Positions 10,215-50,719 of a DNA stretch of 64,000 nt are shown here, one piece after another. The notes under the pieces are model-generated. The model was not told the origin of the DNA and did no database searches. It worked only from the letters and a program-made list of their open reading frames with translations. Every line of letters starts with the position of its first letter. The stretch's first letter is position 1. Origin of the DNA: Octopus sinensis. Lineage: Eukaryota. Location: contig NC_043005.1 in assembly GCF_006345805.1 (NCBI RefSeq), forward strand, positions 93,186,001 through 93,250,000, read 5' to 3'. The position numbers and the translations under genes are program-made.

Positions 10215-12641
10215 AAAACAATTTAACTTGAAACTGAGGAATTACTCAATACTTTTTCATGGAGTCCATATTTATTAAGTTTTGCTTGGAAAATGTTGAT
10301 ACTGAATTCAAAGTTTCCACGTCCTTGTCTTCATCAGGCAGTCTGCTAAAAGCAAGCAAGCCAAAACTTTACCTATAGCGGAACAGTAAACTCTGCGTGT
10401 GTGTGTGTGTAGGTTCAGGCATGGCTGTGTAGATAAAAAGTTTGCTTTGCATCCCTGTAGTTTCAGGTTCAGCTGCACTGCACGACACCTTTCTATAGCC
10501 CTGGGCCAACCAGTTTGGCATACAAGAATAAAGCCTTTTGTGTGTGTGTGCATGTATGAGGGTAGGAAATGTGTTTGAGAACAATAAAACAGCATGTTTT
10601 AGTCCCCAGGTTGTGCCAGAGCAGGAAGTTAGTTATAAGAATGAGCTTCATCAAGTGATTATGAGGATAAAAAAGACAAATAAACAAAGTAGGAATGTAT
10701 TTACAGGAAAATGTATAGAAAAATTATCGATTTTTAGAGATCATTAATGCAAAATTATACAATTTCATTACTATTCTCTAAAATATTCTAATTGACTGGC
10801 CCTGTCCCCCAAAATTTCAGGCCTCATGCCTAGAACAGAAAACAATATTCTGAGACCTTATTACATAATATATAGGTTTATGGAACCAGTCGTTGCTCAT
10901 CCAGAACATCTGTAATGATAAGACTATTGTATCATTTCTTTTGTTTATTTGTTTTCTCAACTTTCCATGTAAATACATTCCTTGCATCTACTTATGTTTA
11001 TCTCCCAGTTTTACTTGTGTGTGTGTGTGTGTGTGTGATCGTATGAAATCTCACTGGATGCAGTTGTTATTTCTCTGTCAACAAATCCCCGCTTTCGAAG
11101 ACAAGTGGAATGTAAACTCCTTTACATGTAAGACAGGGTTAGGGTTTGCTCACTGGAAAACAAACCAGTTGTAAAAACAAGGGGCTTCTCCAACAAATAT
11201 ATTGTCTAACCCATGCTAGCATGGCAAAATGGACATAGAATGAATGAAGAAACAAATGAATATATATAAAATTTAAAAGATTTCTCTTGAAAGTATCAAT
11301 TCTAAAGAGTTGTTTACCATTGGCTGTATTTAGGATTAGTGCATTAGTTTGAGTATTAACCAGGCTTTGTAAATGTATTTCTATGAATATTAGGGAACAG
11401 CTTATTCCGATTCCTGTGTTCAAATGTGGAGTGAATGTTCAATCTGTCTTAACTGTATTCTCGGCCCCTACGGTGTACATTATATTTACTGACAGCAATT
11501 CACAGCATGTATAGATTAACAATCAGGCCTCTAGACTTGTGATGTCTCCAAGGAAAACAACGCACTGGGCCCTATAGTATTCATTAACAGCATTGGGTCA
11601 CTTAATCCATGGCACACCCAGACAACTGCTCTGCATGTCCATACCTCAACATACCTAATCTATATTTTAAATGAAATAAGATGTTGTGATCTTGATGCTT
11701 TTTGCAAAAAAATATTTGTAAAAAGAGCTTCAACCTGTGCCCAAAGTTATGTCATAGTCTGGCCAAGAGAATTTACTTCTTACAATTGAAAATACTGTAG
11801 CAAGCAATAGAATCAGAACCACCAGGCAGAATGAACGTCCAATGCATTCTTAATCTCGCTAAAGCCATTTCACTTGACTGCATCTAATAAATGTACTTGA
11901 GAAATGCATGACTCTTTCAAATATGTAATTTAGCCACCTTTAGAATACCGGCTCTTATGCTGCCTCCTAAAAGGAAACAAATATTAATGGACACATTGAA
12001 CCAAAGTCTATCAATACATGTGAAATTGTTTGTTACATATTTATCTTTTCAGTTTCATTTTTACATTCAACTATTCTTTATTTTGTGGCTTCTGTTTGAC
12101 TGCTTAGTAAAGTTTAATCTGTGGAAAATTGACAAATCATACTGTGTTTATGTGTTTAATGAGTTGTTTAAATTACTTTTCTTCTCAATCATATAGGAAG
12201 GAAGCCATTCAACATTTTCTTTGAAAAGATAACTGTCATTAAATTATGGAATTTAAAAAGAAATGTTTGCATTTGTGTAACCCTTGTATATAACTTCATG
12301 TTTATTATTTATTTTAATTTTATATTTATTTTTAATTTTACAGCTTACCCTGACAAAAATTTATTTTATTTCTCTGTGTTTTGAAATTTCACAAATTTCT
12401 ATTGACTGTTAACTGTCATATATACATACATATATATATATATATATATATGATGATGATGATGATGATGAAGAGACACCGTTTCTTTTTTTAATATGTT
12501 GAATTAATTTTTACATGTTGGTCAGAATTCTGCTGCCTACTACTACTACTACTACTGCCATCATCACCAATCCCAGTAGCTGGTGCCAGCTACTTGCCTC
12601 TAGGCATGCTTGTAACAGTGTTGTCATGTTCTTGTTTGCAG

Positions 12642-12776
12642 CATCTGAACCTAATATACTTAAAGTGCGCTCAGCTCTGAAACAGAAAGTTATGGAACGG
12701 CGCATAACACACAGTCCAATGCTGCGGCGGAAGGATAAAGGCCCCTTGCCGCTCAAACGCAAATCACCTCTGTCAA
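12642..12776 (+). CDS. HDAC4: HDAC4-like exon: (A)SEPNILKVRSALKQKVMERRITHSPMLRRKDKGPLPLKRKSPLS; first 14-3-3 serine and NLS
   Basis: ttgtttgcag|CATCTG ... TCAA|gtatgt; 135 nt, phase 1-1; resembles vertebrate [29 protein letters not shown]. Confidence 0.96.
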
Positions 12777-12921
12777 GTATGTATTTATGTGGCATAATAG
12801 ATACAAATACTTTCCAATCATATTTATTACACTTATTATTATTATTATAAAAAAAAAATCATATTCTATATATTAGTTACTGTTCCTTTTTCTGTCTCAT
12901 GTCTACATAAATACATGTGTG

Positions 12922-12968
<47 letters not shown>

Positions 12969-13639
12969 ATATTTATATATATACATGTATGTATTTATAT
13001 ATAATATACATGCATGCATGCATACATACATAATCACACAGACATGCATATATTTGTAGTCTTCATGTTTGAGATAAATTGAGCTCTTTATAGACTTCAG
13101 CAATTTGTGGGCGTGTGGAACAATCCTCATCGTTGCTGTTTGTAAATGCATTGATAGGTCAAATTCAAGCAAATGAAATGCAAGAAATTAATAAAATAGA
13201 AATTTTGTTTTTAGTTACTATGTTTGTCATGCAGCTAAAGTGGATTTTCCCGCCTCCCTCCCCCCACCAATCAAGTTCACTGTTAATTGAATTTCTGTTA
13301 AGATGACTCAGAATTTATTGCTTGATATTGTTTGTACTCATTCATGGTAGAATTTATAGACTTTAGGGGTTAGAATTAATACTATTCGCTACAAATATTA
13401 CTGTTATTTGTTTTATGTATAAACTTATTATTATTTTGATTATTAGTTATTGTTGTAGAAAGTTTAAAACCTTTGAATTATTTTGCCTGCTTTTGAAGAA
13501 TCAATCAGAGAATAGGGGGGAAATGGTGTGTCAATAATGCAAGAATTTATAAGACTTCAGTTTTTTTTCTAAATCACATTTTACCTTTTTGAATACAGTT
13601 TACAGATGTCTTTAGATCAAGTTACCACTCTCTGTCTGT

Positions 13640-13712
<73 letters not shown>

Positions 13713-14692
13713 ATGAAAATATTTTTTTTTTGTTCAATGCAAGCCAAAAGATTGATAATGATTTTGATTCAGTGGTTGATTGCCAGGTGTTTTTGTATTT
13801 GCATATTTTTTTAAAACTTATAATGAACATTTTGAACCAATCCTATCTTCTTATTCCCTTCCCATGCAAAACTGTTCATTCGAAGACTTGGCATTAGATA
13901 TTTCTCCTCAAATCAATGGACACATTCCCTAAATTTTAGGCCTTTGCTCTTAAAAGATGTCACTTTGGAATTGTAGAGATTGTATTTGATTTCTTAATTG
14001 AATGAAAACTAAACGTTTGAAAGAAACCAAAATCCAACTTGCTATATTTTTCATCATTTTGCCAGGTTAGCATTGATGAAATGATTCTGTAGAAATAAAT
14101 AAATATTAATCTGTGGATGCAGTTATTGTGAGTCTTAACCAGAACACATTTCTCAGTTTTTAACTTGAAATGCTGTTTGTTATCAGACAAATTGATGTAA
14201 TTGAATTGTGTACCTTAAACTCAACTCTCTTGTGCTATGTTTTAAATAAGATCAGTTTTCATAGTAATTATTTTTATCCTGTCAACATGAAAATCATCAA
14301 AAATGGGTTTCATGTTTAGTTTCCCTAAATCTAAGAGTAATTTTCTATTTAAATTCCTGAACAGAAATTTAATCTGTTGTTTACAACTGCAATTTGTTGT
14401 TTACTGTTTGTCAGACAATTTTGCTTGTATCATTTATTCTTGCATCCAGAACAAAATTCTACTGGTTGTTCCACTTCCTGAGATTACTTTTGGTAATCTT
14501 CCTGTTGTTTTTCTTATTAAAATCTAAATAGACCTTACTAAATAACTTAGGTGGATGCATACAGGTGCACTCTGATTCATTTCATTTAGGACAATGGATA
14601 TGACTTCATCATCCTCAGATACTCACATTTGCTTTATAACTTCAAGCCTGAAGTCAACCATTGTGCTGCTCCACGGTGCATGATGCGCAATT

Positions 14693-14827
<135 letters not shown>

Positions 14828-15315
14828 CTCCAGTCTACCTGACTGTAAAACACAGCATCCAACTTTAAATAGTATTATTCCAACAATTGGCATCTTATGT
14901 GAATATTGGAAAAGTATCCGGCCTATGTTGATATAGAAGACCTGTAAGAGAAAGAAAAAACATAAGTGTGTGGGTATGGCATCCAAAAATTCTTTGGCAA
15001 AACCATGCTGGCATGAAAAAGTGGATGTAAACACCCACCCCCACACATGCACAATGGCCTTAGAAAACACATAGTTGTGAAGTGAACTCCTTAACGATAG
15101 AGCCATGCATGTACTTTCTAGCCTTCTCTCCCTCTCTCTATGTATGTATGTATATATATATATATATAGAGAGAGAGAGGTTATAAGAGGTAATGGTGTC
15201 AATAAGACCCAAAGGTGTCAGGTAATGCTGAGTAAATGTTATGGATAGATCATAGTTAAGCTCCAGGTTCTGTGATTATGCGAATAAAGAGTCCAACGTA
15301 AGTCATATATCAGCA

Positions 15316-15965
15316 TGTGACAGAGTCAATGTAGAAAAGACCAAAGTTCTAGAAAGTAGGAAGGGGAACTCATCACACACACCTCCAGGTAGGTAGCCCT
15401 GCCCAATCTGTAGAAAAGGTGTAAATAGAAACTCCATAAGATGTACCCAGTGTAAGCTATGGACACATAAGAGGTGTAGCAACATCAAAGGAAGATTAAC
15501 CGGGAAAGATAGCTTTCATGTGCGGCAGATGCACAGGGGCAATAGACACCACAGATACTCAGAAAACAGATTCCATCACACTCTGTGGGGAGAAACTAGA
15601 AGTAGTTGATAGCTTCTGCTACCTAGGTGACCAAGTTAGTAGTAGGGGTAGATGGTCAGAGAATGTTACCACTAGAATAAGAATAGCTTTGGCAAAGTTT
15701 AGAAAGCTTCTACCCCTACTGGAGACAAAAGGTCTCTCGCTCAGAGTGAAAGGTAGATTGTATGACGCATGTGTGTGAACTGCCATGCTTTATGGCAGTG
15801 AAACATGGGCTGTGCCTGCTGAAGACATGTGTAGGTTCGAAAGAAATGAAGCTGGCATGATCTGCTGGGTGTGAAATGTCATTGTGCACACATGGCAGTC
15901 TAAACGCCCTGAGAGAAATGATGGACATAAAAAGCATCGGATGTAGCGTGCAAGAGAGACTGCTG
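15316..15965 (+). mobile_element. RTE-clade LINE fragment with Cys-rich PHD-like segment
   Basis: RVNVEKTKVL..CPICRKGVNRNSIRCTQCKLWTHKRC..CGRC..LEVVDSFCYLGD..RIRIALAKFRKLLPLL..VKGRLYDACV. Confidence 0.9.
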
Positions 15966-17519
15966 TGCTTACCTTTGATCATAGGGTAACCTGCTGTGCT
16001 TGAGGAGATCTATTGAGTCAAGTACATCAACATCAAAATAAAAATCAAATGGCTGTGCTTTCTTAGCCTGTAATTTATTGATGGTAGATGTATACTGGTT
16101 TCATCAAAGACTTATTCATTGTTAATCCAGAAGTGATCATTACCTGAATAAAAAAACAATTAGATGAAGCAATCTACTAATGTTTGTTAATTTTCTTGAG
16201 ATAGAAATGGTAACTTGACATTGTGACTGGAATTAGCATAAAACCTGAATGGATGTCTGTGTCTGTGATTTTCAGTAAATAAGAAAGTAAAGCATCAAAT
16301 TTTATCAGATTTAATAAAGATAGTAAAGAAAGGCTGAGAAAGTTCATCAGGAGATATGAAGCGCCAAAAGAGAAACTCTTTTTTTCTTTCTTTTGGCATC
16401 AAAATTGAACACTCAACAGTAAAAAAGGTTAATATGATTGTTAGTATGCTCCCCCTTAAAACCAAGCCTGATAATGTTTGTGTTAATAATGTTGAAGATA
16501 ATTGTGATACTTGCTTTGTCTTTGTGTGTGTGTGTTAACATTCAGTTGTGACACCATTGCGAATAAAGGAATAATATCAAAGACAAAATAGAAACAATTT
16601 CTCCCATATGGCTGACTTACAATTAAATAGCCAAGCAAGATAACCTGCAAAAAATTGTGCATGAATAGAGGAGTCATATGAAACATTGAATTAGATTTAC
16701 TCCCTGAAATAAGAGGATCAGTGCAGAGTTGTGCACATAAGTATTTAAAGATGGTGAAAATTAATGGTACCAGATGCAGCAATAAAAAAATAGCATTAAG
16801 AACTATTACAGAATAAACAAATAGTTTTTAAGAAAAGAATTCAATTGACTCAATACCATTTGTCCAGTTCTGAAGTACAGCTTCAGTACAATACACTGGA
16901 GGATAAGTAAATGTAGAAAGACTAAATAGGAACTGCCAACAACTGCAGCTCAGACAAACCCATGACAAGGGAACAGAGCCTAAGTACAAATACGTTAGCA
17001 AATTGAGCTCAGTGGATCTTGAAGAATACAAGCAAATGTAAATTGATTAATATAAGGAACATAATTATAAACTATTTTGTGTATGTGTGTGTATGTATAC
17101 AGTTAAGTATGTGTGTATGTATGTACTCTTCCTTTATTGGTGGGATCAACAAGAAAACGTCCACCATACAGCAGAAGAAAAGTATTGTTTAATAAAAAAA
17201 GGATGTTTATTTTGAGCCTGAATCATTGCAGGATAATATACAATGTGCTAAACAAGCCCATCCAATTACTGTAGTATCTGAGCATGAAACTTATAGTAGC
17301 TCATATTTAATTCCTGTATTTATAAAGTATTTATAAGAGAACCGCAGTTCTCTTTCTGTGGAATTATTTTGTGATGCACATGGTAATCTTGGAGGCAAAA
17401 TATGAATTCACTCGTCTATATAGATTTGGATGTGCTGACTATCTTCTGTTATTTCCGATGGCGCTGGATCGGGATACAAAGGGTAGGTTCATAGCATTTG
17501 CAAATTTATAATTTATCGG

Positions 17520-17581
17520 ATTGTGGTGCTGATGACGGGAATGAGTTTTTTATAATTCTAACCCAGAAACGCGTCCACAAT
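17520..17581 (+). ncRNA. Type I hammerhead ribozyme motif (Penelope-associated minimal type)
   Basis: CTGATGA 17529-35; stem II GGG/CCC; GAAAC-GC-GTC 17566-75 with palindromic ACGCGT; stem I GTG/CAC plus ATT/AAT around a 3-nt bulge. Confidence 0.8.
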
Positions 17582-18058
17582 TGACCAAAGACTGTTTGAT
17601 TTCGTTATTTTTCTTCTTTTGCCTATGTGAGTTACAAGTAATGTTATATGTGGAGTAATATTTGCAGTAAAAAGGAATAAGCGGTATTTGGCTGCTATTT
17701 CTAAATTTTTGGTATACATATATATATATAAACTTTTTGTAAAAGTTACTACCGATAATGGTTCTCTTTCCATACCAAAACTACTTGGTAATAATTATTA
17801 ATTTTAAAATTAATAATTATTCACCCTTATATTAGTATATAAACACACACACACATATATATATATATACATTTGTATATACACACATAAATATATATAT
17901 ATATATATATATACCTATATATAAAAGTAATTTTAGAGACAGGACCACCTTCAACTCCATCAACACAGAAAAGTTTTATACCCAACCACTCCATAAAATG
18001 TTAAAAATTAAATCTAATACTAACTATATCTATTCTGAGTCTTCTATTTTCCGTTTAT

Positions 18059-18159
18059 AAGACTACACGTGTTTCATGAAAGTACGTCGGTATTGGTTAG
18101 ATGCGAGGTATCTAGTTTCAATACTTACTCGGGTTGACATGCTCCCAATCCTCAGGTCT
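18059..18159 (-). ncRNA. Type I hammerhead ribozyme motif with enlarged branched stem II
   Basis: Minus strand AGAC-CTGAGGA-T-TGGGAG...CTTTCA-T-GAAACACGTGTA-GTCT; palindromic stem III ACACGTGT; stem I AGAC/GTCT. Confidence 0.7.
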
Positions 18160-18814
18160 GGATTCCTCTACATTTTTCACTACCCCTATCTCTTATATAC
18201 TTCCATGATACTCTGTATCTTCAATATAATCTTACTTAACATGGCTCTGCATGTGTAATGGAGTTTACGAACACACACGTGTAATGGTATTTGGGAACAC
18301 ACACACACACACACACAGCAAGGTAGACAAAAAATTATTTCTTTACTAGATTTCCAAATAAACTGCCATGTTCCTCTCCCTAGATTTAACTTCAACTTGT
18401 TTGGGTTTTTTTTTATTTTTGTAAATTTTTATAGTGTATGTTTGTTTATTTTTCACTTTATTGTGAAATGTTAAAATGATGTATTTTGCTGTTTGTCAAC
18501 TTGTTTTAAATAATGAAAATATTTTTCTTAAAATAATTGTCACTTTCGGATTTTTTCGATATTTTGTCTGTATTGTAGTTATTAGTGATTGTATTTTTCT
18601 TTATTAGCCTTTATGTTGTGTTTTTCATTCCATGTTTCATGTCGTAACAATGTGTTTGTTACATATATGTTTATTGTTGTTGGGGTTTTTTTTATCATTT
18701 ATTTTAAAAGAAATTTTGTTTTCTAGCTTTATGCTTGGTGTACAAATTTAGAATGTTTCACCATAATAGATAAGACTTCCAAATGTTTACTTGTTTGTTA
18801 TTATTATTATTATT

Positions 18815-19010
18815 AAGGCAGTGGGCTAGCAGAATCGTTAGCACGTTGGATGAAATGCTCAGTGACAATTCTTGCAGCCCTTTATATTCTAAGTTCAAAT
18901 ACCACCAAAGATGAACTTTGCCTTTCACCGTTTTGTGGTTGGCCAAGTACTAGGGTTCAATACCATCAACTAACCCCATTGCCCAAAAATTCCTGGCCGA
19001 TTGTTTGAAA
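18815..19010 (+). mobile_element. SINE, second family (aggcagtgggctagcagaatcgttagc...)
   Basis: Same family as copies at 35812-36114, 43165-43585 and 48157-49335. Confidence 0.8.
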
Positions 19011-21118
19011 CGGTTGTTGTTGTTATTTTATGTTACATTCATGTCATGATCACCTTTATTCTTCATTCAATCAACCAAAGTTCTCTTCCTCTATTCATTA
19101 ACTGCTTTGTGCCAATGGGTGAAATCCTTGGCACCCATCATCATCATCATTATTATTATTATTATTAATTTTCATTATTCATAAATTTTGTTAGGTTTCA
19201 CTTAAGTCATTAACAACTTCAAATTCAATAAGTTCTACCAGCATTGGAATGGTTTTAGTCTTTCAGATATTCGCCTTTTCTCTAGTGTCTCTCACATGTT
19301 ATCAATGCTATCATCGTTATAATTCACTTGTCTTAATCAGAAATTGTCTATTTTTTCCCCTTTACTTTTCCTTCATTTCTCTTTTCTCTCTTATTTACCT
19401 TTCTCCTTTTTGTTTTTCATAAAAGAAAGAGGGATTCAACTTTTCACTTATTAATTTTCATAGCAATTACAAAGATTGAAAATTGACTTATTTACATCAA
19501 CACCTCTTTTAATTCAGGAATAGAATACAGTTTATGTGTTACAAACGCTTCTTCCATACATCCTGCATTTCGTAATTTGTTTCTTCCTTTCTAAAATGTC
19601 CTCTGCTACTAATTAACTACGTATAAGTGTCTGTGCATAGCCATTCTTTCCAGAATGATCTAGTTTAACATTGCATCTTTGAAGGATGAGATGTCTTTAT
19701 AAGTCTGCCATCATAATATCTCTTGTATGTTCTCAAAGGACACTTGCTTACACCCCCACTCTCTCTCTCAGAAATTGTTGAACATTTGGGTGCCTAATAC
19801 TCTTCTGGAATGGATACTTTAGTGTCATGGCAAATCTCTTACACACACGCACGCACACCCACACACATATATGATATGTATTTCAGATATATATATATAT
19901 ATATATATATATTTAAAGGTCTGTATAGAATTTGCATTTACATGCCTGTTTGTGAACACACATTAACAATAGAAATTCTTTTTTAAATCACCTATTTCCA
20001 TTTTTTCCAAATATTAATAAGATCGTTAATTCATTAATGGATTATCAAAGGAAACAATTCTATTTTGGTATCATTTAAACATGGGATTCTTAATCAAACT
20101 AAAACTAAATTAGATTAACACAACGAAACACTGTGTCAGTAGAATTACATATGAAAACACTGAATTTCTCATTGTTTTATTGTAGTAACAACCTACGGCT
20201 CTTGAATCATTCCTAAACTGTTCCAACTGTAAGATTTTCAAAGGGATGTTACACAATTGCTCTCTTTTGTTAGGTTCGTATCAGAACTCTAATAGCATTA
20301 TACAACAGCAACGCCTTTCTCTATAAACTATTACTTTGTACAAAATGGAACTGGATGAATAGAAGCCTCATCAGCAGAGAGAGAGAGAGAGAGAAATTAT
20401 TACTGCTGTTTGGCACTTTGAGCAGCTCTACATGTTGGACTACATCTTAGTTAGATATCTATTCATAACAGCTAACCTATCTGAAATGTATTTCATTTAT
20501 ATCATCATAGTATACATCTATTAAATCGTTGAATAAATCACGTTTTTTTGTCCAAAAAGGGACCATATTGCTCCAATGCAGTTTCTGGACTCCCTCCCTA
20601 CTTATTTATCATTAATTCCTTTTTTTTTTTTTTTTCAACTGCTGTTATTTTCATTCATTAATGAACATTCAGATATCTGACAATAAGTGTGAAAACTGAC
20701 ATAATCATCAGATGTTTTTTTGTCCTGGTGCACTGCAATGTTGATTCAAAATAGTGTCAGACATCCAGCTCCTATGGCGTTCATATATTTGGTAATGAAA
20801 CGGGAATCTATTAATTGGTCTTTGCTCATGAGATTACTGTGTTGCTTTGTTGACCTTATGTTCCAGCCTTTCTATTGTCTTCCTGACAATGTATTCCATT
20901 CTTCCATCCTAGACAATCTTCTGCAGTAAGAAGAGTATCCAACTGTAAAAAAAAAGAAAAAAAAAAAAACTGTAAACATGTCCCTAAATTTGCAAAACTA
21001 GCTAACCCAGATCATTATAGGAAATTGGGGGTAAAACAGCTCTCTTTGCTTCTCAATCATTTTGTTCCCTTTTCTTCTTTCAAATAAATTTCCCTTCATA
21101 AAGTTAGTGATAGTATTC

Positions 21119-21165
<47 letters not shown>

Positions 21166-21710
21166 TCACTTTTATATTATTGGGTACTTTTTCCAAATAT
21201 GTATATGAAACTATATAAACACACACACATACACACACCCATATATGCATGGTGTATGTAGTGAATGCAGCATGAAAACATGGATGTAAAATGCTGATGA
21301 TATCTATCTCGTCTATCTACCTGTATGTGTGTGCGTGTGCATGTGTGCGTGCATGTGTTTATATGTGCACATTTACACACGAATACATGACTAACCAGTT
21401 CAGGTCACTTTTCTTATTAATACGCACACACACACACTAACATACACACACACACATACATCATTGATTAATATTATTATAAGGCATTTCTTTATTTTTT
21501 GTTTCATTGATTGATTTTTTTTTTAAATTCCTTATTTTCTACACCAATTCTGTAGGGATTGATTCTGCATGATCTTGTTTTTGTCTTTTACTGCTGCTTG
21601 AAGACTGCAAATAATTTTTGTTCTCATTTTTTATCTTGTGAGCATGTTTTGTTTCTGTTTTTCTTTTCTTTTTTTTTTACTAATTTAAACTGTATAAACT
21701 GATGTGTATA

Positions 21711-21747
<37 letters not shown>

Positions 21748-23719
21748 GATTTTGATCAAATATCATTTCAGCTAAGCACAAATATTGTTTGATTTATAAA
21801 TCAAAACCTGTTGTAGTGTCAATTAAGTCTTTGTTTAATAAAACAAATAATAATCTCATTTGATTAGTAGTAGCACAAACTAAGATAGTCTTTTAATGAA
21901 GACCTTAATCACCTGTATAGTTTTCCATGTTAATTATTCTCAAATCATTAGTGCAGTGTTTTGTGAATTTATTGAAAATCTTAAATTTACATATTTTCTG
22001 CTTTGTATATTTGTTGAGCAAGAAACATCTGGAGTGTGTGTGTGTGTGCATGCATGTATTACTTGTAGCTAAATTTCAATAGGTTGGTTTTTAAAGTGGC
22101 AGAGAATGTCGAAAACTTAATTTTGAAAGTTCACAAAAAATGTGCCATTCAAAAACGAGTTCTAAAGTGTTTCAAGATATTACTTAAATGCCAAATATAT
22201 AACTAAATGAGTAATGTGTTTGGTCTAGATGTTGCCAGCAGACGTACAAGGCTGCCATTATGTGAGCTTTCTCAAAGGTGGCTGACTTGATCCTCAGTAA
22301 AACAAGGTATTGTAACGGCCAAACAGGGTAGCATTGGGCTCAGGACCTTAATGCTCATGAAATGAAAAAGCAAACGAAATGCTTTCTAATGAATGTGAAT
22401 TTCTTTAAAGAAAAACTCAAGAAGAGAAACACACATTCTTTTGTTTTGAGAGTTTTCCTCAATGTATCTTTTATGGTTTGTATATTCTGAAGGAAAACCA
22501 AGACCAAATAAGTAGATACTTATTTCGATTATAGAGTTAAAAAGAAAACTCTTTCTAATGTAAAGAGACAGATTTTCCTAAAAGAGAGCTTGATACTGGC
22601 CATTACTGTGGCTGCTTAGTGTCTCACAAATAGATAGGAAGATATTGACTTCATTGTGGAATATACAGAGAGTAGGTTGAGGTGGGGTGAAAAGAAGGAA
22701 GCATTTCACATGACTACTTCAGTCACTGGAATAGGAATAAGAATGGCTTTGAAAGAATTTATCCCAAGTAAAACCATCAGAACTTCTTGTTGAAGAAATC
22801 AAATGGTTAGGGAAGCAAATGGAGGACAGAATAATAAAAGAGAAAGCTGCAATTCTTTCAAGTATTGTTGAAAATGTGTTTTATGCATCAAGTTGGGTTT
22901 AGTATTGCATAACTCATTTGCTTCGTTAAGCATTTGATAAAAATTCAATTCTTGTAGTCAGCACAAATAATGTCTGCAGAAAATATGCACCACTGAGATC
23001 TCTGGCATACTGATAAGAAAGCAGAATTTTAGATGTACAAGATATGTTGGTTTGCTTGGCAGAAAGAGCAGCTATAAAAGGAAGATGGAATGTTCAGATA
23101 ATTTGCTTAAAGTATTTCTCTTTCCTCAGTAACATTACTAACACTGAAAGCAAATCAGTTAAAACACAGAGAGGGTGGTAACAATGCTAGATTGGAAATG
23201 TTTTTTAAATCTTGCCTCCAAATTTTAATAAATACAATACCAAGCAGAAGACTGAATATATCCAAGTTCTGATGAGAGAATTTTTTGAAATGTGTGTATT
23301 TCAGACAATGATCTACCAGTAAAATACTTTAAATTTCTCTCTCACACACACACATTCACACCACACACACACACACACACACGCACACACACGCACACAC
23401 ACACACACACTCACACTCACACACACACACTCACACACACACACTCACACACTCACTCACTCACGCACACACACTCACACACATTCACACACACATTCAC
23501 ACAAGCACAAACACACATGTAAAGCACACCTCTGATCTTTCAGATGTTCTTTTGCGAATGCAGATGTTGCTTCAAGTAACTGGTAAAGTGTTTCCTTATT
23601 TCGTAGTTTGTGGGGTCTGTTCAGAGTGCTCAAAGCAGGTCATGTGACTGGAAATGCTGGAGGTCCTAAGTTCAGTTGCTTGGTTTGAGATGTAGAAAAG
23701 GTTGGAAATTCTCCATTAG

Positions 23720-24010
23720 GCATGCCAATCTGTAGTGATAACACTTTGTATTTTCTGTTGAAGCATATTGTGTGCTGGTTCAGTATCTGGAAGTTTTCAG
23801 ATAGGCAATGACTACAATTATGTGACCAAATCAAATATGGACGAGCTCTATCAATAACATTATAAGTTATAGTGGGGTGATGGTGTCCTTAATTCTTGTG
23901 TTTCTAGATATATCAGGACAGGGAAGCAGAATTTCTTGTTGTTAAGGCTAAAGTAATTGTTATGTTGCTTGAAGTTATTAATGGTGAGTGCCATATTGTT
24001 CCTCTGGATT
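23720..24010 (-). mobile_element. Penelope-like element GIY-YIG endonuclease relic
   Basis: Minus strand YNVIDRARPY..SHNCSHCLSENFQILN..FNRK resembles the PLE motif W.II.RA.PY....CNLCL.EK..IL...LNKR. Confidence 0.55.
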
Positions 24011-26394
24011 AGGTAGTGTGACTGATGCTTGGTGTACCTTCCTGTTGGAGAGGTAATGTCCCATGAGTGGACAAGTGGGTTGATTTTGACAGTTGCAAGG
24101 TGACTGTTGGGGTGTTAACATATGTTTTTAAGTGAGGCATTTGGTGGTGGGGACAGTCTAGGCCAGAATAGTATGCATTAAATAACTTATGGTATTTGTA
24201 TTTTAGTGGTACCGTACAAAAGATACAAATATGTAGAGAAGACATAAGGGAGGGTGAGGGGGAGTGTCTTCTTAAGAGTAATTTTTCTCTATGATTAGCT
24301 GTGTCTTTTCTTTTCTTTTCCTATTTTGATGCATTTCAGATAATCCCAGTATACAGTTATTGGTCCACACATACCTATTTACATATCTGTACACACTGGT
24401 AAACACATGTAAAAATGTAAAAAAGTTATGGACATGTGAAAAATATGGGTGAAAACACCAGATGTTTTTTTGTGTTAGATTTTTGAAAAGTTTAATAACA
24501 CACATGACTGGTTTAATTCAATGCTGCTTCAATTGTGTATACGGGATTTTTATGCAGCCCAATGGCTATTTGCCTTAGCAATGGATGTATTATTCATTAT
24601 TCCCTTTATATCAAAAGTGATAAATCTTGTCTTGGCATGTGGCTGCAAGTACACATCATTGACAAAGCCTGTGTATGCTGGAAATGCATCTGGTATTCTC
24701 ATTAACTGCTACCAGGATGATTTTTCATTTGCCTCTGATATGTATTGTGTTTTTAACACAGCATATTTTTAAGAGATTTGATCTTGAGTGAAAACTACAG
24801 TCTTTCCTACCAGTAACGTTGTGTATGATGCACTGATGGCTATTTTGTTTAAAAGAAGAAAACTAAGGAGTATTAGTGAAGTGTCTCTGTCTTTACTGTG
24901 AATTTCTCTTTTCAATAAATTTGGGTTTAAGTCATCTCTGAATTTAAAATCGCACCAAATTTGTGATTTCATTGAGTTTTTTTTCTAATGTTTTTATTGT
25001 TTATCATAATTTCTGGATAAATAGAAAATATCTGCAATGTTACTTCTCTACGCTTCTTTAAAAAAATTTTGTGGGGGGAAATGAATGTCAGCAATATCAT
25101 CTAATTTCTGTCTCAGTGTGAGCTAAGAATTCATTGTATTTATTTCTTTGTTATCTATTTAAAGTGAAGTAGAACTCTGTTGAAACAGGGAAATTATTTG
25201 TTTGAACCCTGGTTCTTTGATATGGACTTCCCATTTTCCAGTGATCTAAGTTAAATCTTTCCATCAAAATTCCATGTTAATTAATGTTCTAAGTACTAGC
25301 TATATTGTTTGTTATTTCCAAAATTAATTGAAGGAAATTCAGTGTATTTCAACTGAAATTTGGTAACAAAAGAGTTAATGTATAACATTTCTAACCTAAG
25401 TTGGGGTGGAATTCTACCATGAAATTCTAAAGAAATTACAGATTAAGCTGTCTAATAAATAAAAATAAATCCAAAATGTAAAAGTAAGACATAACTTTAT
25501 GGTTCATTGATTTAGTCATGTAAATTATTTGAGCCATCTGTCTTCATTGGTTCATTGAGTTGTAAATTAATTTTTTGATGCCAAATACTCTGGTTCTATA
25601 AAAACTAAAATTCCTGTTTCAACACTATCTAAATTAAAATCTTGCATCAAAATATAAAGTTAATTTTCGTTCCAAACTTCAGTTTTATAAATCAAATGGT
25701 TGCTGTAGGCTACATATTTTTCAAAATTAATTGAAATAGAGGCAGTGTATTTTAATGATATGGTAACAAAATGGCTAAGCCTGTATACAAATAAATCTCT
25801 CTTTGAAAATAGACCTTGCCTATTTCAGATCAACTTTTTTAGGCAAAGATACTTTTAAACAGAATAATAATTTGCAAATATCTAAAAATAAGTAACATGC
25901 TCAAAGACTAAGAGGATGCCTGTATAGACTGTTTATGATCGAAAGATAATATTCTGCCATTTAGTATATTCAGATATTAAAATTCTTTATTCTACTAAAG
26001 TTGTTTCATCCTTAACTATTTAAAGATAGAATTAGCACATGAATAAAATTCAGTTTCTATTTAAAAGTAGTTTTGATAACTAAGTCATCATTTGTGATCT
26101 ACTAACAACACTAGGAGAGTTAAACCACCACATTTCAATCTGTTTTGTATTATGACAATTAGCTTCTATTTTTATGATTTTTCTTCATTTTTTTTAACCA
26201 CAAAGACTATATTGTGAGTACACCTGTCCATAACAAGTTTATACTTTACTTTTTTACTGACTTAAAGCTTTTTTAAAAAGAAAATCCATGAAAATTTCAA
26301 TGTTTTTAATGTAGTAATATAGTTTAATTCATAATGAAAAAATAAAATCCATGTGTTGTTTCTTCCTCTAAAAGATGCCCTTGTATCTTTTTAG

Positions 26395-26496
26395 TAGATT
26401 CCTCCATATGTAACAGTAACCCAGACTCAGGCCCAAATTCTCCACCAAGTGGTACACTTCCAAATGGAAGCCTAACATCCCTCCAATCAAAAGAGG
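26395..26496 (+). CDS. HDAC4: HDAC4-like exon: (I)DSSICNSNPDSGPNSPPSGTLPNGSLTSPPIKR
   Basis: ctttttag|TAGATT ... AAGAG|gtaaat; resembles vertebrate DSACSSAPGSGPSSP; ends in phase 1 while the next exon starts in phase 0 (see findings). Confidence 0.85.
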
Positions 26497-26629: not shown

Positions 26630-27040
26630 AGGTGCAGGAGTGGCTGTGTGGTAAGTAGCTTGCTGACCTACCACATGGTTCCAGGTTCAGTCCCACTGCA
26701 TGGCATCTTGGGCAAGTGTCTTCTGCTATAGCCCCGTGCCGACCAATGCCTTGTGAGTGGATTTGGTAGACGGAAACTGAAAGAAGCCTGTCGTATATAT
26801 ATATATATGTGTGTGTGTGTATGTGTTTGTGTGTCTGTGTTTGTCCCCCTAGCATTGCTTGATAACCAATGCTGGTGTGTTTAAATCCCCGTCACTTAGC
26901 GGTTTGGCAAAAGAGACCGATAGAATAAGTACTGGGCTTACAAAGAATAAGTCCCGGGGTCGATTTGCTCGACTGAAGGCGGTACTCCAGCATGGTCGCA
27001 GTAAAATGATTGAAACAAGTAAAAGAGTAAAGAGTATGTA
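26630..27040 (+). mobile_element. Full-length tRNA-derived SINE with internal microsatellite and (aaagagt)n tail
   Basis: Pol III A/B-box-like head (tggctgtgtggtaag; ggttcagtccc), conserved body, tail; CpGs retained. Confidence 0.9.
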
Positions 27041-27364
27041 TTTGTGCTTTTATGATAGTTTAATGAGGCATATTTATAATATATGCCATGTATCTCCAAG
27101 CAATCTTTCAAGTTTTGTTTATGCATTAGATATATTTTAAAAACAAGGATACTGAGTGGTGAGAAAATAATAAAAAAAAAGTGACAAAGGTTGACGCAAA
27201 AAAATGGAATGAAGAGAACGAAACAAAAGCAAGAAAGCTAAGATCCCTGTCCCCCCTGATTGCAGAAGCCACAAATGATGCAGCTGCTATAGAACAAAAT
27301 AAGAGAAAATCTGTCAAAGTCTGCAAGAGAGTGACTTGATCTGCAGTTAGTGGTGTCCTCCAGT

Positions 27365-33697: not shown

Positions 33698-34863
33698 TGA
33701 GGTGATATCATAGTTCAAGTTCCCAGACTTTAAATAAAAAATTACTTATTTACTTAAGTTTGAACATAAGTGAGTTGAGGACCTTCTACGATTTGTTCAG
33801 GATCGCGATAACAATGTTAAAATGGTGACCTTTGAGCTGCATTTCCATTTTGGGAAAGAGATGGAAGTGTGTAGGTGCTAAATCTGGTGAATAGGGCAGG
33901 TACAGAGACGGCACCATGTTGTTTTTGGTGAGAAACTCATGAGTGAGAAGAGCTCGGTGATAGGGTGCCTTGATGTTGTGAAGAATCCAATTCTTCCTGC
34001 TCCACAGATCTGGGGTCACTTTTGCTGAATGCCCTTCCTCAAAGGTTTCAAAACATTGCAGTAGAACTCTTGACAGTCTGGCTCTGGAGAATGAACTCTC
34101 AATGCACAATACCACAGATGTCAGAAAAACTGATGAGCATGCTCTTGGCCGAGCTGTGGCTCTGTCTTGCATTCTTCAGTCATGGAGAGGAACGGCTCTT
34201 CCATTGTCATGATTGCTTCATCTAAAGGTCACACCCATAGACCCAACTCTTGTTACCAGTGATGATCTTTGACATGAAGGATGGATTATCAGGAATCAGC
34301 AGGTAGAGGACAAATTTGGCACAGACACACTGCATGTTCAATTTAGACATTACAATTGCCTGCACAGACCCCATCCCCCGCCCCATACAACAGACCAACA
34401 ACATCAGCAATGTCACTGATTGTCTTCCAACGGTCCTCATGCACAAGCTGAGGAATTTCTTCCACATTTCCAAAGCTGACGCCCATCATGGCAGGTCTTC
34501 CACATCGTTCATCATATTACAAAGACATTCTTCTGCTTTGGGAAGCGTCCATGTCACTTAAGACATTTCCTCGTTGCCGTAAACTTACCAAAGCATGCTC
34601 AATGTCTCTGCAGCAGACTCTCCAAGTTTAATGCAAAATTTCCCCGTTGGTTCTTTGTTCCTGTCCATGACAAAAATCACAGACTACAGCATTCACATGT
34701 GATCACAAAGACACAAATTTCACAACTTGCAAAATAAACACAGCAATGTCACTCAGCCCACTGCCTCCTGAAGGTCATTGCTAGCTCATACTGTGCATGC
34801 AACCACGAGCTGCCATCTGTTGGTGCACTACAGAACTAGTCTGGATACTTTTTGATACCACTC
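33698..34863 (-). mobile_element. Decayed full-length mariner transposon
   Basis: Minus frames IITGNKSWVYG.., WILHNIKAPYHRALLTHEFLTKNNM..PYSPDLAP..LFPKMEMQLKGHHF; degenerate TIRs at both ends, each flanked by TA; about 1.17 kb. Confidence 0.9.
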
Positions 34864-35405: not shown

Positions 35406-35811
35406 GTATGGAATGGGAAGGGTACATTATTTAAATTTAGTCTAAAATATTGTTTGACTTATTCAAAAATGGGATGGTCAGGTCAGGAATAGATTTTATC
35501 TTCTGGTCTGTTTGATCAGTGCTGATCTGGGATGAACTAACAACTGTGACTTCCATCTACTTAGCTGGAGATTTTGATGCCATTCCAAGTTTATTAGTAA
35601 CAAGTATAAAGAAGGTTAACCATCCAATTGTAAAGATGCATTTCATTTGCTGCAGAATTTCACTTGTAAAAATATTAAAACTTCATAAAGCCAGAGTAGC
35701 ACAGAAGGAAATAAGAAATAAATCTTTAAAGGATTTGCAAATCATTGCTGCATCAGAAATTATGGAATTCATAATATTCACAATAATTTTTAAAAAAAGG
35801 ATAATAATATA

Positions 35812-36114
35812 ATCTTTCCTACTCTAGGACACAAGGCATGAAATTTTTTTTTAGGGGAAGGGGGCCAGTCAATTAGATCGACACCAGTATGCAACTGGTA
35901 CTTAATTTATCGACCCCAAAAGGATTAAAGGTAAAGTCAACCTTGGCAGAATTTGAACTCAGAACGTAAAGACGTTCTAAGTTCAAATCACACCAAGGTT
36001 GACTTAGCCTTTCATCCTTTTTGGGTCGATAAAGTACCAGTTGCATACTGGGGTTGATCTAATTGACTGCCCCCTCCCCAAGAATTTCAAGCCTTGTGCC
36101 TAGAGTAGAAAAGA
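35812..36114. repeat. Fold-back SINE pair (two 3' halves in inverted orientation, 4-nt loop)
   Basis: Centre agaacgt-aaag-acgttct at 35961-35978; arms complementary out to tctttcctactctagg / cctagagtagaaaaga. Confidence 0.9.
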
Positions 36115-36405
36115 AAAGAATATTGTAGGTTATTGTTCTCAACCGATTCCAATCAGCATTGCTTGAGCTAACTTATGGTTAGATAGAAAAAGCTAAATAT
36201 ATATAGAATACCAAAAAAAGAATAGGAGTCTTTAGAGTCCATTAAATGACAACCTGAGCAATGTACTTCATACAGTTGAGTCCCGTTGCACACTGTGTCA
36301 CATTCTTTCTAATATGTTGGTCTGTTCATATTTCATTCAATTTGGTTTTAGACAATTGCTTAACTGGTGGAACCACTCTGAAACTAAGCAAACTTCACCT
36401 TCTAA

Positions 36406-36822
36406 TAATAATAATAATAATAATAATTGTGTACAGTGCTCAGGTGCACTACAACTCATCTAAAGTGTATATATAATCAGGTGTAGTTTCGGCGGATTTC
36501 GGAAAGCATGAGGGCCTTAAAGGATGCAGTGTCATGGCAGTCAACAACTGACGCAGGCAGTTTATTCCATGCTTCAGCAACTCTGAGCGTGAAAAAATGT
36601 TTCCGAAAGTCATGGGAGCTGTGTTGTTTTCTGACTTTGTAGGCATGTCCACGTGTGTTAGACACATGGAGATCAAAAAGGTGTTCAGTGTTGTTGTTGG
36701 TGAGGCGGTTGATAACCTTGTGGGTGTTTACCAAGTCCGTCGCCAGACGCCGGAGCTTCAGTGAATCCATGCCCAGGGAAACAAGGCGCTCAGAATATGG
36801 TAGGTGTCTGATGGAGGGTATT
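36406..36822 (-). mobile_element. CR1-like LINE 3' end, 5'-truncated, apparently young, with (ATT)n tail
   Basis: Uninterrupted frame RIPSIRHLPYSERLVSLGMDSLKLRR..NTRGHAYK..RKHFFTLRVAEAWNKLP..FK; possible TTCTAA target duplication. Confidence 0.92.
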
Positions 36823-38257
36823 CTAAATGTGAATAATTTATATTTGTTTAAATAGTCATGCAGCTAATGTATAGGACAGACTGTTGGCACTCATAAATTG
36901 ATTGTAGCTTTGGTGTGTCACTGAACACGGCATTTAATCCCATTTGTCTTAGATTACTTTAAAGAGAGATAGCAGCATCTTTCTAGAAAAGATGCTTATG
37001 AAAGAAGCATCCATCTTGTTTCATAGCACAGAGACTTGAGCTAAACACTGACTTTCAAATCACATACATTTGTAATGGGACTACTTTATGTACATGAAAG
37101 CTTTACAAATTTTGTTTGTTCATTACCAACTGGATGACATTTCAACATTCACTTGTCCACCATGATGGAAAGGAGGAAGTTGCTTATCAAAATATATAAT
37201 TTTTGATTTCTTTCTTTCAGTAACTTCTGTTTCATGGTTATTTAAGGTTTTGTGTTTCCAAAATTAATATGTTGAAAGGCCTCAAATGTTATTTTATATT
37301 TGAATCACATTCTGTTTTTTTTTTTTTTGATAATTTATTTGCTTTTTTCATTGATAGTGTTGTATTTTTGTTATGTATTTATATTTCTTATTTAGAAAAA
37401 AACGAATTGTTATGTATGTCCGTATGAATATTTGTATGTGAATTTGTTCATATTTATTGTGAAATTTGAAATAGGATTCCTTTTTTATATGTAATAGGTT
37501 TTCTCTTCTTTTTACAAACAAAACAAAAAAAGTAAAACAAAACCAAAAAAAAAAAAGGATCTGCTTATTATTTTGTTTTGGTTTTCAAGAATTGTAAACT
37601 TCAAGCAGCAGATGTTATTACTGGCAGGCAGACATTCTCATACAACATTATTTAAATCTTCATTTAATTATTTCAACAATGTGTGGCTTAAGCCATAATT
37701 GGTTTCATTTTTATTTTAATCATTAAGAAAGAAGGGAGGACATTCCTCCATATTCACATCAGAAGGGTGGTAGGAAGAGGAAAGTGGTTTAATTAGGGAT
37801 CTTATAAATAGTGTTTCTGTCTTCCATGATAGAAAGATAAGTTCGTTTAGTTTTAAAGAGCCAAAATCACTCCTATACATATGTTTGTTTGTGGATTGGC
37901 TCTTCAAATTGCTAAAATGTAAGAATGATTACAAATGGCAGGTGTCTTAAGTAATTTGAAGAGATGCGAATGATGTGGGAAAATCATAGATTAAGTTAGC
38001 TGAATCCATTTCTGCTGTTTTTAAATGGAATTTTCTGTAAAATTGATTAGTCCAATACTGAATGTGTGTGTGTGTGTAGATATATATAGATATATACTTC
38101 TCGTATCTGAAATGTGCTTTAATATGTTAACAGTAAGTAGGAATCATATTATTCTATAAACCTTCATTAATGGTAAGCAAGATTTATTTTCAATTATGTC
38201 TTTGGTGCAGACTACTATAACATTTCTTCACTTAAATTAAACATCTTCACAAGAAGC

Positions 38258-43164: not shown

Positions 43165-43585
43165 AATCCTTTCTACTATAAGCACAAGGCCTGAAATTTG
43201 GGGGGAGTGGGGGGGGCTAGTCAATTATATCAACCCCAGCGTTTAACTGGCAAAAGTAGTCAACCTCACCACAGTTTGAACTCAGAATGCGTAAGTCAGA
43301 GCTTAGGACAAAATGTCCTGCAATACTTCTAATTAACGATTCTGCCAATCTCAAAAAAAAAAAAATGATTTCAAATTTCAGCATAAGGCCTGAAATTTGG
43401 AGGGGCGGGGGGACTAGTCAATTACATCAACCCCAGTGCACAACTGGTATTTATTTTATTGACCCCAAAAGGACGAAAGGCAAAGTTGACCTTGGTGGCA
43501 TTTGAACTCAAGAACGTAAAGACGAATTAAATGCCACTAAGCATTTTGCCTGGCATGCTAATGCTTCTGCCAGTTCGCTGCCTTA
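43165..43585 (-). mobile_element. Two tandem SINE copies (second family)
   Basis: Two reverse-complement copies, about 43165-43350 and 43365-43585. Confidence 0.8.
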
Positions 43586-43604
43586 ACAAAAGTAATAAGA
43601 AGAA

Positions 43605-47767: not shown

Positions 47768-49343
<1,576 letters not shown>

Positions 49344-49974: not shown

Positions 49975-50014
49975 GTAGATAGAGAACACAATAATCACCT
50001 ATTCTTTTCACTTA

Positions 50015-50024
50015 GTGGATTTAT

Positions 50025-50069
<45 letters not shown>

Positions 50070-50257
50070 TATATATTTGTGCACATACTTGTATATATAT
50101 ATGTATGTATGTATTTGTGCACATACTTGTATGTATATGTATATATATACACATGTATTTGTGCACATACTTTTATATGTATATATATGCTCATATTTGC
50201 ATATACCTGTGTATATGTGGATATAGATGTGTATATATACTCATATTTGCATATACC

Positions 50258-50327
<70 letters not shown>

Positions 50328-50352
50328 ATATATATAATATATATATATATAT

Positions 50353-50387
<35 letters not shown>

Positions 50388-50408
50388 ATATAATATATAT
50401 ATAATATA

Positions 50409-50447
<39 letters not shown>

Positions 50448-50671: not shown

Positions 50672-50719
<48 letters not shown>

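What the first reader, a model, noticed from the sequence alone, without database searches (positions are those of the whole stretch)
17520..17581. Near-intact hammerhead ribozyme in sense orientation inside an HDAC4 intron
Seen: CUGAUGA and GAAA cores, stem II (GGG/CCC under a C-A mismatch), palindromic stem III (ACGCGU) with a GUC cleavage triplet (predicted cut after 17575), and stem I with a 3-nt bulge. Established: Penelope-like elements carry minimal type I hammerheads whose palindromic stem III favours cleavage as a dimer, and stem I bulges can contact loop II. Inference: it is transcribed as part of the 13.6-kb HDAC4 intron, so it could cut the pre-mRNA co-transcriptionally or in trans with transcripts of other genomic copies.
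Basis: partly seen in the sequence, partly recalled or inferred. Interest (0 to 1): 0.8.

Follow-up and report, generated by a model that had tools for sequence, protein, structure and literature searches.

The report
Degenerate hammerhead motif in HDAC4 intron
A hammerhead-ribozyme-like motif does sit in sense orientation inside an HDAC4 intron, most likely as a relic carried in by a small retroelement, but it is damaged next to its core, is predicted to fold into an inactive hairpin and probably does not cut the pre-mRNA, so it is an ordinary find.

Summary
They lie in sense orientation in a 13,618-nt intron of a class IIa (HDAC4-like) deacetylase gene. A tailored descriptor matches about 0.002 times per simulated 64-kb window, so chance is unlikely for this window but not excluded for a genome-wide scan.

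"Near-intact" is too generous. Rfam gives no hammerhead match even at E<=10, whereas clean minimal hammerheads with the same boxes from metagenomes score 25-29 bits. A custom covariance model gives 28 bits, within the range of chance sequences sharing the boxes (19-33) and far below clean ones (52-64). The minimum-energy fold pairs C3 and C17. About 7e-6 of the ensemble leaves the core free, against 1e-3 to 6e-2 in the controls.

The motif lies in a 404-nt block (17357-17760) that retains CpG (o/e 1.09 against 0.24), is bracketed by a perfect 10-nt direct repeat, and folds as a rod (z = -4.3). This fits a solo retrozyme or Penelope pLTR-like insertion. No second copy, RT or GIY-YIG remnant, or homologue was found.

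Verdict: probably a decayed retroelement hammerhead, catalytically doubtful. Interest is low.

The parts
17357..17760 (+). Candidate inserted element of 404 nt (GC 0.34) that carries the hammerhead-like motif; proposed solo retrozyme or pLTR-like unit
   Evidence: CpG o/e is 1.09 over 17400-17700 against 0.24 for the window, in the top 0.5% of 300-nt windows. MFE is -108.7 kcal/mol with z = -4.26 and 0/100 shuffles as stable; the neighbouring control has z = +0.9. Among all 404-nt windows of this sequence it ranks only in the top 5.6%.
17347..17356 (.). Left copy of the perfect 10-nt direct repeat GTTCTCTTTC (putative target-site duplication)
   Evidence: Comparable pairs of segments in the window share a 10-mer in 2-4% of cases.
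17761..17770 (.). Right copy of the direct repeat GTTCTCTTTC (putative target-site duplication)
17520..17528 (+). Stem I, 5' strand AUUGUGGUG; three of its bases (a GUG) must bulge or remain unpaired at the junction
17529..17535 (+). Core box CUGAUGA (C3-A9)
17536..17565 (+). Helix II region: C17536/A17565 mismatch (or an extra nucleotide on each side), GGG/CCC, a 3x3 internal loop, GAGUU/AAUUC and a 6-nt loop
17566..17569 (+). Core box GAAA (G12-A15.1)
17569..17574 (+). Palindromic ACGCGU (A15.1 to U16.1); it can form helix III only with a second copy
   Evidence: The same GAAACGCGUC box occurs in clean minimal hammerheads from metagenomes.
17575..17575 (+). C17; the predicted cleavage would be 3' of this base
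   Evidence: It is paired with G17526 in the predicted MFE fold.
17576..17582 (+). Stem I, 3' strand CACAAUU
12642..12776 (+). Upstream HDAC4-like exon (the SEPNILKVRSALKQKV... region)
   Evidence: AG/GT boundaries. The exon is conserved at 73-80% nt identity in three ENA assemblies.
12777..26394 (+). Host intron of 13,618 nt
26395..26495 (+). Downstream HDAC4-like exon; the 3' end is inferred from a GT donor
   Evidence: the reading frame is continuous with the upstream exon.

Best explanation
The motif is a relic hammerhead of the minimal, dimer-dependent type I kind carried by Penelope-like elements and their non-autonomous derivatives (metazoan non-LTR retrozymes). It arrived inside a ~404-nt insertion (17357-17760) that landed in sense orientation in an intron of the HDAC4-like gene. 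The insertion duplicated 10 nt of target and is young enough to keep its CpGs in a strongly CpG-depleted intron. The catalytic boxes are intact, but the helices next to the core are not. There is a C/A opposition, or an extra A, between helix II and G12, and three extra bases in helix I. As a result the RNA is predicted to fold into a long hairpin that pairs C3 and C17. It has no second copy nearby with which to build helix III. It therefore most likely does nothing to the HDAC4 pre-mRNA and is spliced out with the intron. Shown here: motif anatomy, gene context, CpG contrast, direct repeat, fold predictions and model scores. Inferred: the retroelement origin, the target-site duplication and the lack of activity.
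For: It is the only such motif in the window and is rare in simulations, at about 0.002 per 64 kb. The palindromic ACGCGU, and a possible extra nucleotide after A9 followed by a G-C pair, match traits listed for PLE minimal hammerheads (PMC4209133). Clean natural minimal hammerheads with the identical UGCUGAUGA...GAAACGCGUCCA boxes exist in metagenomes. The CpG-retaining block is shown. The bracketing 10-nt direct repeat has an empirical chance of 2-4%. The 404-nt size, GC of 0.34 and a repeat longer than 4 nt match published retrozyme features (PMC7229834). The fold is rod-like with z = -4.26. For inactivity: there is no Rfam hammerhead hit at E<=10, while controls score 25-29 bits. The custom model gives 28.3 bits, against 52-64 for clean motifs and 19-33 for chance box-sharers. 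The MFE of -17.4 kcal/mol pairs C3 and C17. The canonical hammerhead register is at -3.2 kcal/mol. The core-free fraction is 7e-6, against 1e-3 to 6e-2 in controls. The double hammerhead is at -16.5 or -29.7 kcal/mol, against -34.8 for two monomers. Intact PLE hammerheads are themselves weak or protein-dependent (PMC4209133, PMC11167929).
Against: No second copy of the motif or of the block is in the window. No RT or GIY-YIG remnant lies within about 1.5 kb on the sense strand. No homologues of ORFs across the block were found. The specific pattern has no match in metagenome or viral contigs. The source genome is not available, so membership in a family is untested. Each supporting sign is modest on its own: the direct repeat has p about 0.03, the fold ranks only in the top 5.6% of this window, and 3 of the 11 CpGs belong to the motif itself. 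One bacterial contig (L086) carries a chance-looking match with stems of similar quality. Nearest-neighbour folding ignores hammerhead tertiary contacts, so inactivity is predicted, not shown.
Confidence: 0.6

Rival explanations
1. The motif is a chance hammerhead look-alike. The two short boxes and partial complementarity arose by accident in unique intronic DNA, or in an unrelated inserted element, with no ribozyme ancestry.
For: Rfam finds nothing. The custom model score of 28.3 bits falls within the 19-33-bit range of box-sharing sequences from bacteria and phages. No copies or PLE coding remnants were found. A genome-wide scan would meet tens of such chance hits, given about 0.002 per 64 kb.
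Against: The per-window chance is about 0.002 or less. None of the 56 viral box-sharers has both stems. The motif lies exactly inside a block that independently looks like a young insertion, on the basis of CpG content, a flanking repeat and retrozyme-like size. The 6-nt palindrome ACGCGU is the kind of helix III seen in real minimal hammerheads (PMC4209133).
Confidence: 0.3
2. The motif is an active intronic ribozyme. It cleaves the HDAC4 pre-mRNA after 17575, either as a dimer with transcripts of other copies or helped by a PLE protein or chaperone, and so influences HDAC4 RNA processing.
For: The core boxes and GUC site are intact and in sense orientation. The CpG retention and strong local structure could also reflect constraint. 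Conserved intronic hammerheads exist in amniotes (PMC6155905). A PLE hammerhead has been shown to cleave with help from its protein (PMC11167929).
Against: Both helices are flawed next to the core. The predicted fold sequesters C3 and C17, and the hammerhead-competent fraction is 100- to 10,000-fold below that of clean controls. There is no partner in 64 kb. No conservation can be shown, because the orthologous exon is found in three assemblies but the introns do not align and carry no such motif. Retrozymes are reported to be depleted from introns (bioRxiv 10.64898/2026.07.22.740005). No RNA-seq reads beginning or ending at the cleavage site were found even for an intact PLE hammerhead (PMC11167929).
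Confidence: 0.05

Closest known systems
Minimal hammerheads of Penelope-like elements (Cervera & de la Pena 2014, PMC4209133; Lunse et al. 2017, not readable here)
   Same: Type I topology, no stable helix III, a palindromic 15.x-16.x segment that implies dimer action, a possible extra nucleotide after A9 followed by G-C, and occurrence as a solo copy away from any ORF, as for most genomic copies.
   Different: There is an extra A between helix II and G12 and a 3-nt interruption of helix I. Helix II is 3 bp plus an internal loop plus 5 bp, rather than a continuous 6-8 bp. No pLTR or RT-EN context is present, and no consensus family is available.
Metazoan non-LTR retrozymes (Cervera & de la Pena 2020, PMC7229834; Li et al. 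2026 preprint)
   Same: A unit within the 150-450 nt range, low GC, a flanking duplication longer than 4 nt, a highly self-paired RNA, and one type I hammerhead per unit.
   Different: It is a single unit, not a tandem array. The hammerhead is of the minimal rather than the canonical kind with loop-loop contacts. It lies in an intron, where retrozymes are reported to be depleted. Expression or a circular RNA was not tested.
Newt satellite 2 / amphibian dimer-dependent hammerheads (Forster et al. 1988, cited in PMC4209133 and PMC7229834)
   Same: A short palindromic helix III, so that activity needs a double-hammerhead made from two copies.
   Different: Those occur in tandem repeats that supply the partner in cis. 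Here no partner is present in 64 kb.
Conserved intronic hammerheads HH9/HH10 of amniotes (RECK and CTCL introns; PMC6155905)
   Same: A sense-strand hammerhead motif inside an intron of a protein-coding gene, thought to derive from retroelements.
   Different: Those are canonical, active as monomers, deeply conserved and recognised by Rfam models. This one is degenerate, is not recognised by Rfam and has no demonstrable conservation.

Membership tests
Hammerhead ribozyme, type I (Rfam RF00163, clan CL00010) | Conserved core: C3 U4 G5 A6 N7 G8 A9, G12 A13 A14, A15.1-U16.1, H17 | tested here: met
   CUGAUGA 17529-35, GAAA 17566-69, U17574 and C17575.
Hammerhead ribozyme, type I (Rfam RF00163, clan CL00010) | Three helices that abut the core directly, with a Watson-Crick 10.1-11.1 pair | tested here: not met
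   C17536 is opposite A17565 at the base of helix II. Helix I has either only 3 bp before a 3-nt bulge, or 3 unpaired bases at the junction. Helix III exists only with a second molecule.
Hammerhead ribozyme, type I (Rfam RF00163, clan CL00010) | Match to the family covariance model | tested here: not met
   There is no hit at the gathering score, none at E<=10 in 301 nt and none at E<=5 in 1.7 kb. Positive controls with the same boxes score 25.5 and 28.7 bits for RF00163 and 21-23 bits for HH9.
Hammerhead ribozyme, type I (Rfam RF00163, clan CL00010) | Site-specific self-cleavage giving 2',3'-cyclic phosphate and 5'-OH ends | not testable with these tools
   Only folding predictions are available. 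The core-free ensemble fraction is 7e-6, and the double hammerhead is less stable than inactive folds.
PLE minimal hammerhead (PMC4209133) | Palindromic 15.2-16.2 segment, and loop 3 when present | tested here: met
   ACGCGU at 17569-17574.
PLE minimal hammerhead (PMC4209133) | Extra nucleotide between A9 and 10.1, with a conserved G10.1-C11.1 pair | tested here: inconclusive
   C17536 can be read as the extra nucleotide and G17537-C17564 as the 10.1-11.1 pair. That reading leaves A17565 as an unexpected extra base before G12.
PLE minimal hammerhead (PMC4209133) | Location in a pLTR flanking an RT/GIY-YIG ORF | tested here: not met
   No Pfam domain was found in the sense frames of 16050-19140. 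No GIY-YIG pattern occurs in the window. The nearby RT-like fragment at 15.3-16.05 kb is a LINE tail with a PHD finger. Most genomic PLE hammerheads are solo, so this weakens the case but does not exclude it.
PLE minimal hammerhead (PMC4209133) | Member of a multi-copy consensus family with compensatory changes | not testable with these tools
   The source genome is not available. No other copy is in the window. Public collections gave nothing.
Metazoan non-LTR retrozyme (PMC7229834) | Tandem array of 150-450-bp units, each with a type I hammerhead | tested here: not met
   This is a single unit. No tandem repeat covers it.
Metazoan non-LTR retrozyme (PMC7229834) | Unit size, low GC, flanking duplication longer than 4 bp, highly paired RNA | tested here: met
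   404 nt, GC 0.34, a 10-nt direct repeat, and z = -4.26. Each sign is individually weak.
Conserved intronic hammerheads (HH9/HH10 type) | Conservation at the orthologous intron position across species | tested here: inconclusive
   Orthologous exons in L001-L003 align at 73-80%, but the introns do not align, and no motif lies within 10 kb of them. The species are too distant for a fair test.

The most novel reading that the evidence does not exclude
The 404-nt block is a recently inserted retrozyme-like element whose hammerhead still works in vivo, as a dimer with transcripts of sister copies or with help from a Penelope-element protein. The HDAC4 pre-mRNA would then be cut co-transcriptionally within a 13.6-kb intron. 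That would be an invertebrate case of a retroelement ribozyme acting on a host regulatory gene.
Probability: 0.04. Interest if true: 0.6.

Novelty: new member of a known kind. Interest (0 to 1): 0.2.

Why it matters
If the best explanation holds, this is one more decayed copy of a class of retroelement hammerheads present in thousands of copies in many animal genomes. Its main value is as an annotation, and as an example that core boxes alone do not make a ribozyme. It would matter only if the motif proved active. A self-cleaving RNA in the sense strand of a long intron of a key chromatin regulator could then be used to study how severing an intron affects splicing in vivo. It could also show how host genes tolerate, or exploit, ribozyme-bearing retroelements, which are reported to be depleted from introns.

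Tried and rejected
- **Rfam.** I searched at the gathering score over the window and at permissive E-values around the site. No hammerhead was found.
- **Second copies.** I searched the window for either half of the motif with up to 3 mismatches, and ran a self-BLAST of 16-19 kb. Neither found a copy.
- **Cross-species test.** The orthologous exon was found in three ENA assemblies, but the introns do not align, so no conservation or empty-site test is possible.
- **PLE coding remnants.** A Pfam scan of the sense frames of 16050-19140 and a GIY-YIG/YxDD regex over six frames found nothing PLE-like.
- **Spurious-ORF trick.** I searched for ORFs across the block to find paralogous copies in public assemblies. 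There were no homologues.
- **Pattern scans.** The specific pattern gave 0 hits in metagenome and viral contigs. Broader patterns gave only controls, not relatives of this locus.
- **Literature.** A full-text search for the box sequence returned only unrelated primers. Lunse et al. 2017 and the supplements of Craig et al. 2021 are not held.
- **Organism.** I tried to name it from HDAC4 homologues. Only fragments of varied taxa were returned.
- **Metagenome ORF.** I tried to confirm that the ORF upstream of the clean metagenome hammerheads (L081/L093) is a PLE reverse transcriptase. Pfam and PDB searches do not recognise it, so its RT-like motifs are only my reading.
- **MITE origin rejected.** The block's ends do not pair with each other. 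The rod spans 17357 to about 17650, and a separate hairpin follows.

Full report
**Observation.**
The + strand at 17520-17581 reads AUUGUGGUG CUGAUGA C GGG (22 nt) CCC A GAAA CGCGU C CACAAU.
- CUGAUGA at 17529-17535 and GAAA at 17566-17569.
- A 3-bp GGG/CCC helix under a C17536/A17565 opposition.
- The palindrome ACGCGU at 17569-17574, and GUC with C17 at 17575.
- A stem I that works only if three bases (a GUG) are bulged.

In stem I, either GUG/CAC abuts the core and is followed by the bulge and AUU(G)/(U)AAU, or a continuous AUUGUG/CACAAU helix leaves GUG unpaired at the junction.

A relaxed descriptor finds this motif and no other on either strand of the 64 kb. In 1,093 simulated 64-kb sequences with the window's dinucleotide statistics, a hit with stem I >=7 occurred in 0.18% of sequences. 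With a palindrome of 6 nt or more it occurred in none. An earlier, looser run gave 0.3-2%. The motif is therefore more than chance for one window. However, the descriptor was written after the fact, and a whole-genome scan would still meet tens of accidental matches.

**Gene context.**
An ORF at 12.5-12.85 kb carries a class IIa HDAC signature. Its core (12627-12784) is conserved at 73-80% nucleotide identity in three ENA assemblies. Splice signals place the exon at 12642-12776 and the next exon at 26395 onward, in frame, so the intron is 12777-26394 = 13,618 nt. Exons at 57.4 and 59.5 kb match the start of the human HDAC4 catalytic domain at E = 1e-32, ahead of HDAC7 and HDAC6. The gene is on the + strand, so the motif is in sense orientation, 4.7 kb into the intron.

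**How good a hammerhead is it?**
Rfam gives no hit at gathering thresholds, none at E<=10 in a 301-nt search and none at E<=5 over 1.7 kb.

This absence is informative. A scan of metagenome contigs for UGCUGAUGA...GAAACGCGUCCA turned up clean minimal hammerheads with exactly these boxes: L066, L068/L073, L081/L082/L093 and L090. They have a G10.1-C11.1 pair, 4-8-bp helix II and 4-6-bp helix I. Two of these controls reach 25.5 and 28.7 bits with RF00163, and two others 21-23 bits with HH9.

I built a covariance model from the five clean motifs. It scores them at 52-64 bits and the bacterial or phage sequences that merely share the boxes at 19-33 bits. The candidate scores 28.3 bits, with helix II not aligned. 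By model-based criteria the candidate cannot be told apart from box-sharing noise.

By simple stem counts it does better. None of the 56 viral box-sharers has both stems. One GC-rich bacterial contig (L086) does.

**Folding.**
The minimum-energy fold (-17.3/-17.4 kcal/mol, z = -2.9) is a long hairpin in which C3 pairs with G17571 and C17 pairs with G17526. Other conformations compare as follows:
- The canonical hammerhead register scores -3.2 kcal/mol.
- The register with three unpaired junction bases scores -10.6 kcal/mol.
- The fraction of the ensemble with core, helix III segment and C17 unpaired is 7e-6. In the clean controls it is 1e-3 to 6e-2.
- A double hammerhead made of two copies scores -16.5 (canonical register) or -29.7 kcal/mol.
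- Two inactive monomers score -34.8 kcal/mol, and a domain-swapped inactive dimer -37.6 kcal/mol.

Nearest-neighbour energies ignore tertiary contacts, so this is a prediction. It still points clearly away from activity.

The literature adds three relevant points. PLE minimal hammerheads cleave poorly even as dimers (PMC4209133). The Anolis Poseidon hammerhead cleaves only with its own protein, and no RNA-seq reads were found that begin or end at its cleavage site (PMC11167929). Retrozymes are reported to be depleted from introns (bioRxiv 10.64898/2026.07.22.740005).

**What the surroundings show.**
The window is strongly CpG-depleted (o/e 0.24). The 300 nt around the motif have o/e 1.09, in the top 0.5% of windows, and the CpGs are confined to 17413-17753.

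A perfect 10-nt direct repeat, GTTCTCTTTC, lies at 17347-17356 and 17761-17770 and brackets exactly this block. Comparable segment pairs elsewhere in the window share a 10-mer in 2-4% of cases.

The 404 nt between the repeats fold into a largely rod-like structure with the hammerhead hairpin as a side arm: -108.7 kcal/mol, z = -4.26, with no shuffle as stable. The neighbouring 404 nt give z = +0.9. Against all 404-nt windows of this repeat-rich sequence, the block is only in the top 5.6%.

The size, low GC (0.34), a duplication longer than 4 nt and a highly paired RNA are the published features of metazoan non-LTR retrozyme units, which are thought to derive from PLE pLTRs (PMC7229834; 2026 preprint). 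I read the block as a comparatively young insertion of such an element, present as a single unit.

**What argues against that reading.**
- There is no tandem array and no second copy in 64 kb.
- No RT or GIY-YIG remnant lies on the sense strand within 1.5 kb. The RT-like fragment at 15.3-16.05 kb is a LINE tail with a PHD finger.
- ORFs across the block have no homologues among 5.8 billion clusters or 1.84 billion representatives.
- The specific pattern has no match in metagenome or viral contigs.
- The source genome appears absent from the collections, since the best exon match is 83% identical. Family membership, the decisive test, could therefore not be run.

**Conclusion.**
- About 0.6: a decayed, solo hammerhead of the PLE/retrozyme kind, carried by a 404-nt insertion, transcribed within the intron but catalytically inert or nearly so.
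- About 0.3: a chance look-alike.
- About 0.05: an active ribozyme that cuts the HDAC4 pre-mRNA.

The first case is a new member of a well-known and very abundant class and is of low interest. The 'near-intact' label and the proposed pre-mRNA cleavage are not supported.

Noticed in passing
window 15300-16050 (+), 52874-53433 (-), 62038-62524 (+): These are fragments of one LINE family: the C-terminal part of an RT ORF with ...GEKLEVVDSFCYLG...RLYDACV...GSETW... motifs. In the 15.4-kb copy it is preceded by a PHD-type zinc finger (Pfam PF00628, E = 1.4e-5). They are unrelated to the hammerhead block.
   Followed up: partly
window 18795-18953; copies at 43462-43604 (-), 35913-36040, 48209-48277, 49074-49117: A short dispersed repeat with 73-78% identity between copies, possibly a SINE or MITE family. 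It lies 1 kb downstream of the block and is not part of it.
   Followed up: no
whole window; 26676-27175, 34351-34675, 36426-36950, 18052-18130: The window is strongly CpG-depleted (o/e 0.24), which suggests germline methylation. A few non-exonic blocks keep CpGs (o/e 0.5-0.7) and may be other young insertions or regulatory islands.
   Followed up: no
window 35755-36259, 53228-53833, 50000-50900: Two regions have extreme predicted RNA/DNA self-pairing (404-nt MFE of -180 to -217 kcal/mol) and are probably large inverted repeats. There is also a ~0.9-kb tract of almost pure A+T (GC near 0).
   Followed up: no
L081 2555-2598, L082, L093 2060-2103 (metagenome contigs VFQS010025570.1, Ga0172376_10263873, SXGQ01337292.1): Clean minimal type I hammerheads (stem I CCGUG/CACGG, palindromic ACGCGU) lie about 300 nt downstream of a conserved ~500-aa ORF. 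By eye that ORF has RT-like motifs (GTAMG..., FIDD), but Pfam and PDB searches do not recognise it. It may be an unannotated PLE-like retroelement.
   Followed up: partly
L066 968-1013, L068/L073 862-903, L090 286-333: Three further distinct minimal hammerheads with GAAACGCGUC and 5-8-bp helix II occur on short metagenome contigs of unknown origin. They score 21-23 bits with Rfam HH9, below its gathering score.
   Followed up: no
L064, L065, L075, L077, L079, L088, L094, L095, L098: Nine marine or polar metagenome contigs share an almost identical 77-nt stretch that contains both hammerhead boxes but no stems. It is evidently a conserved (coding?) sequence, and it shows that box co-occurrence alone is not evidence of a ribozyme.
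   Followed up: no
window 17716-17930: (TA)n and (CA)n microsatellites start inside the 3' part of the block and continue beyond it. PLEs are reported to insert preferentially at microsatellites (PMC8557442), but such repeats are everywhere in this window.
   Followed up: no
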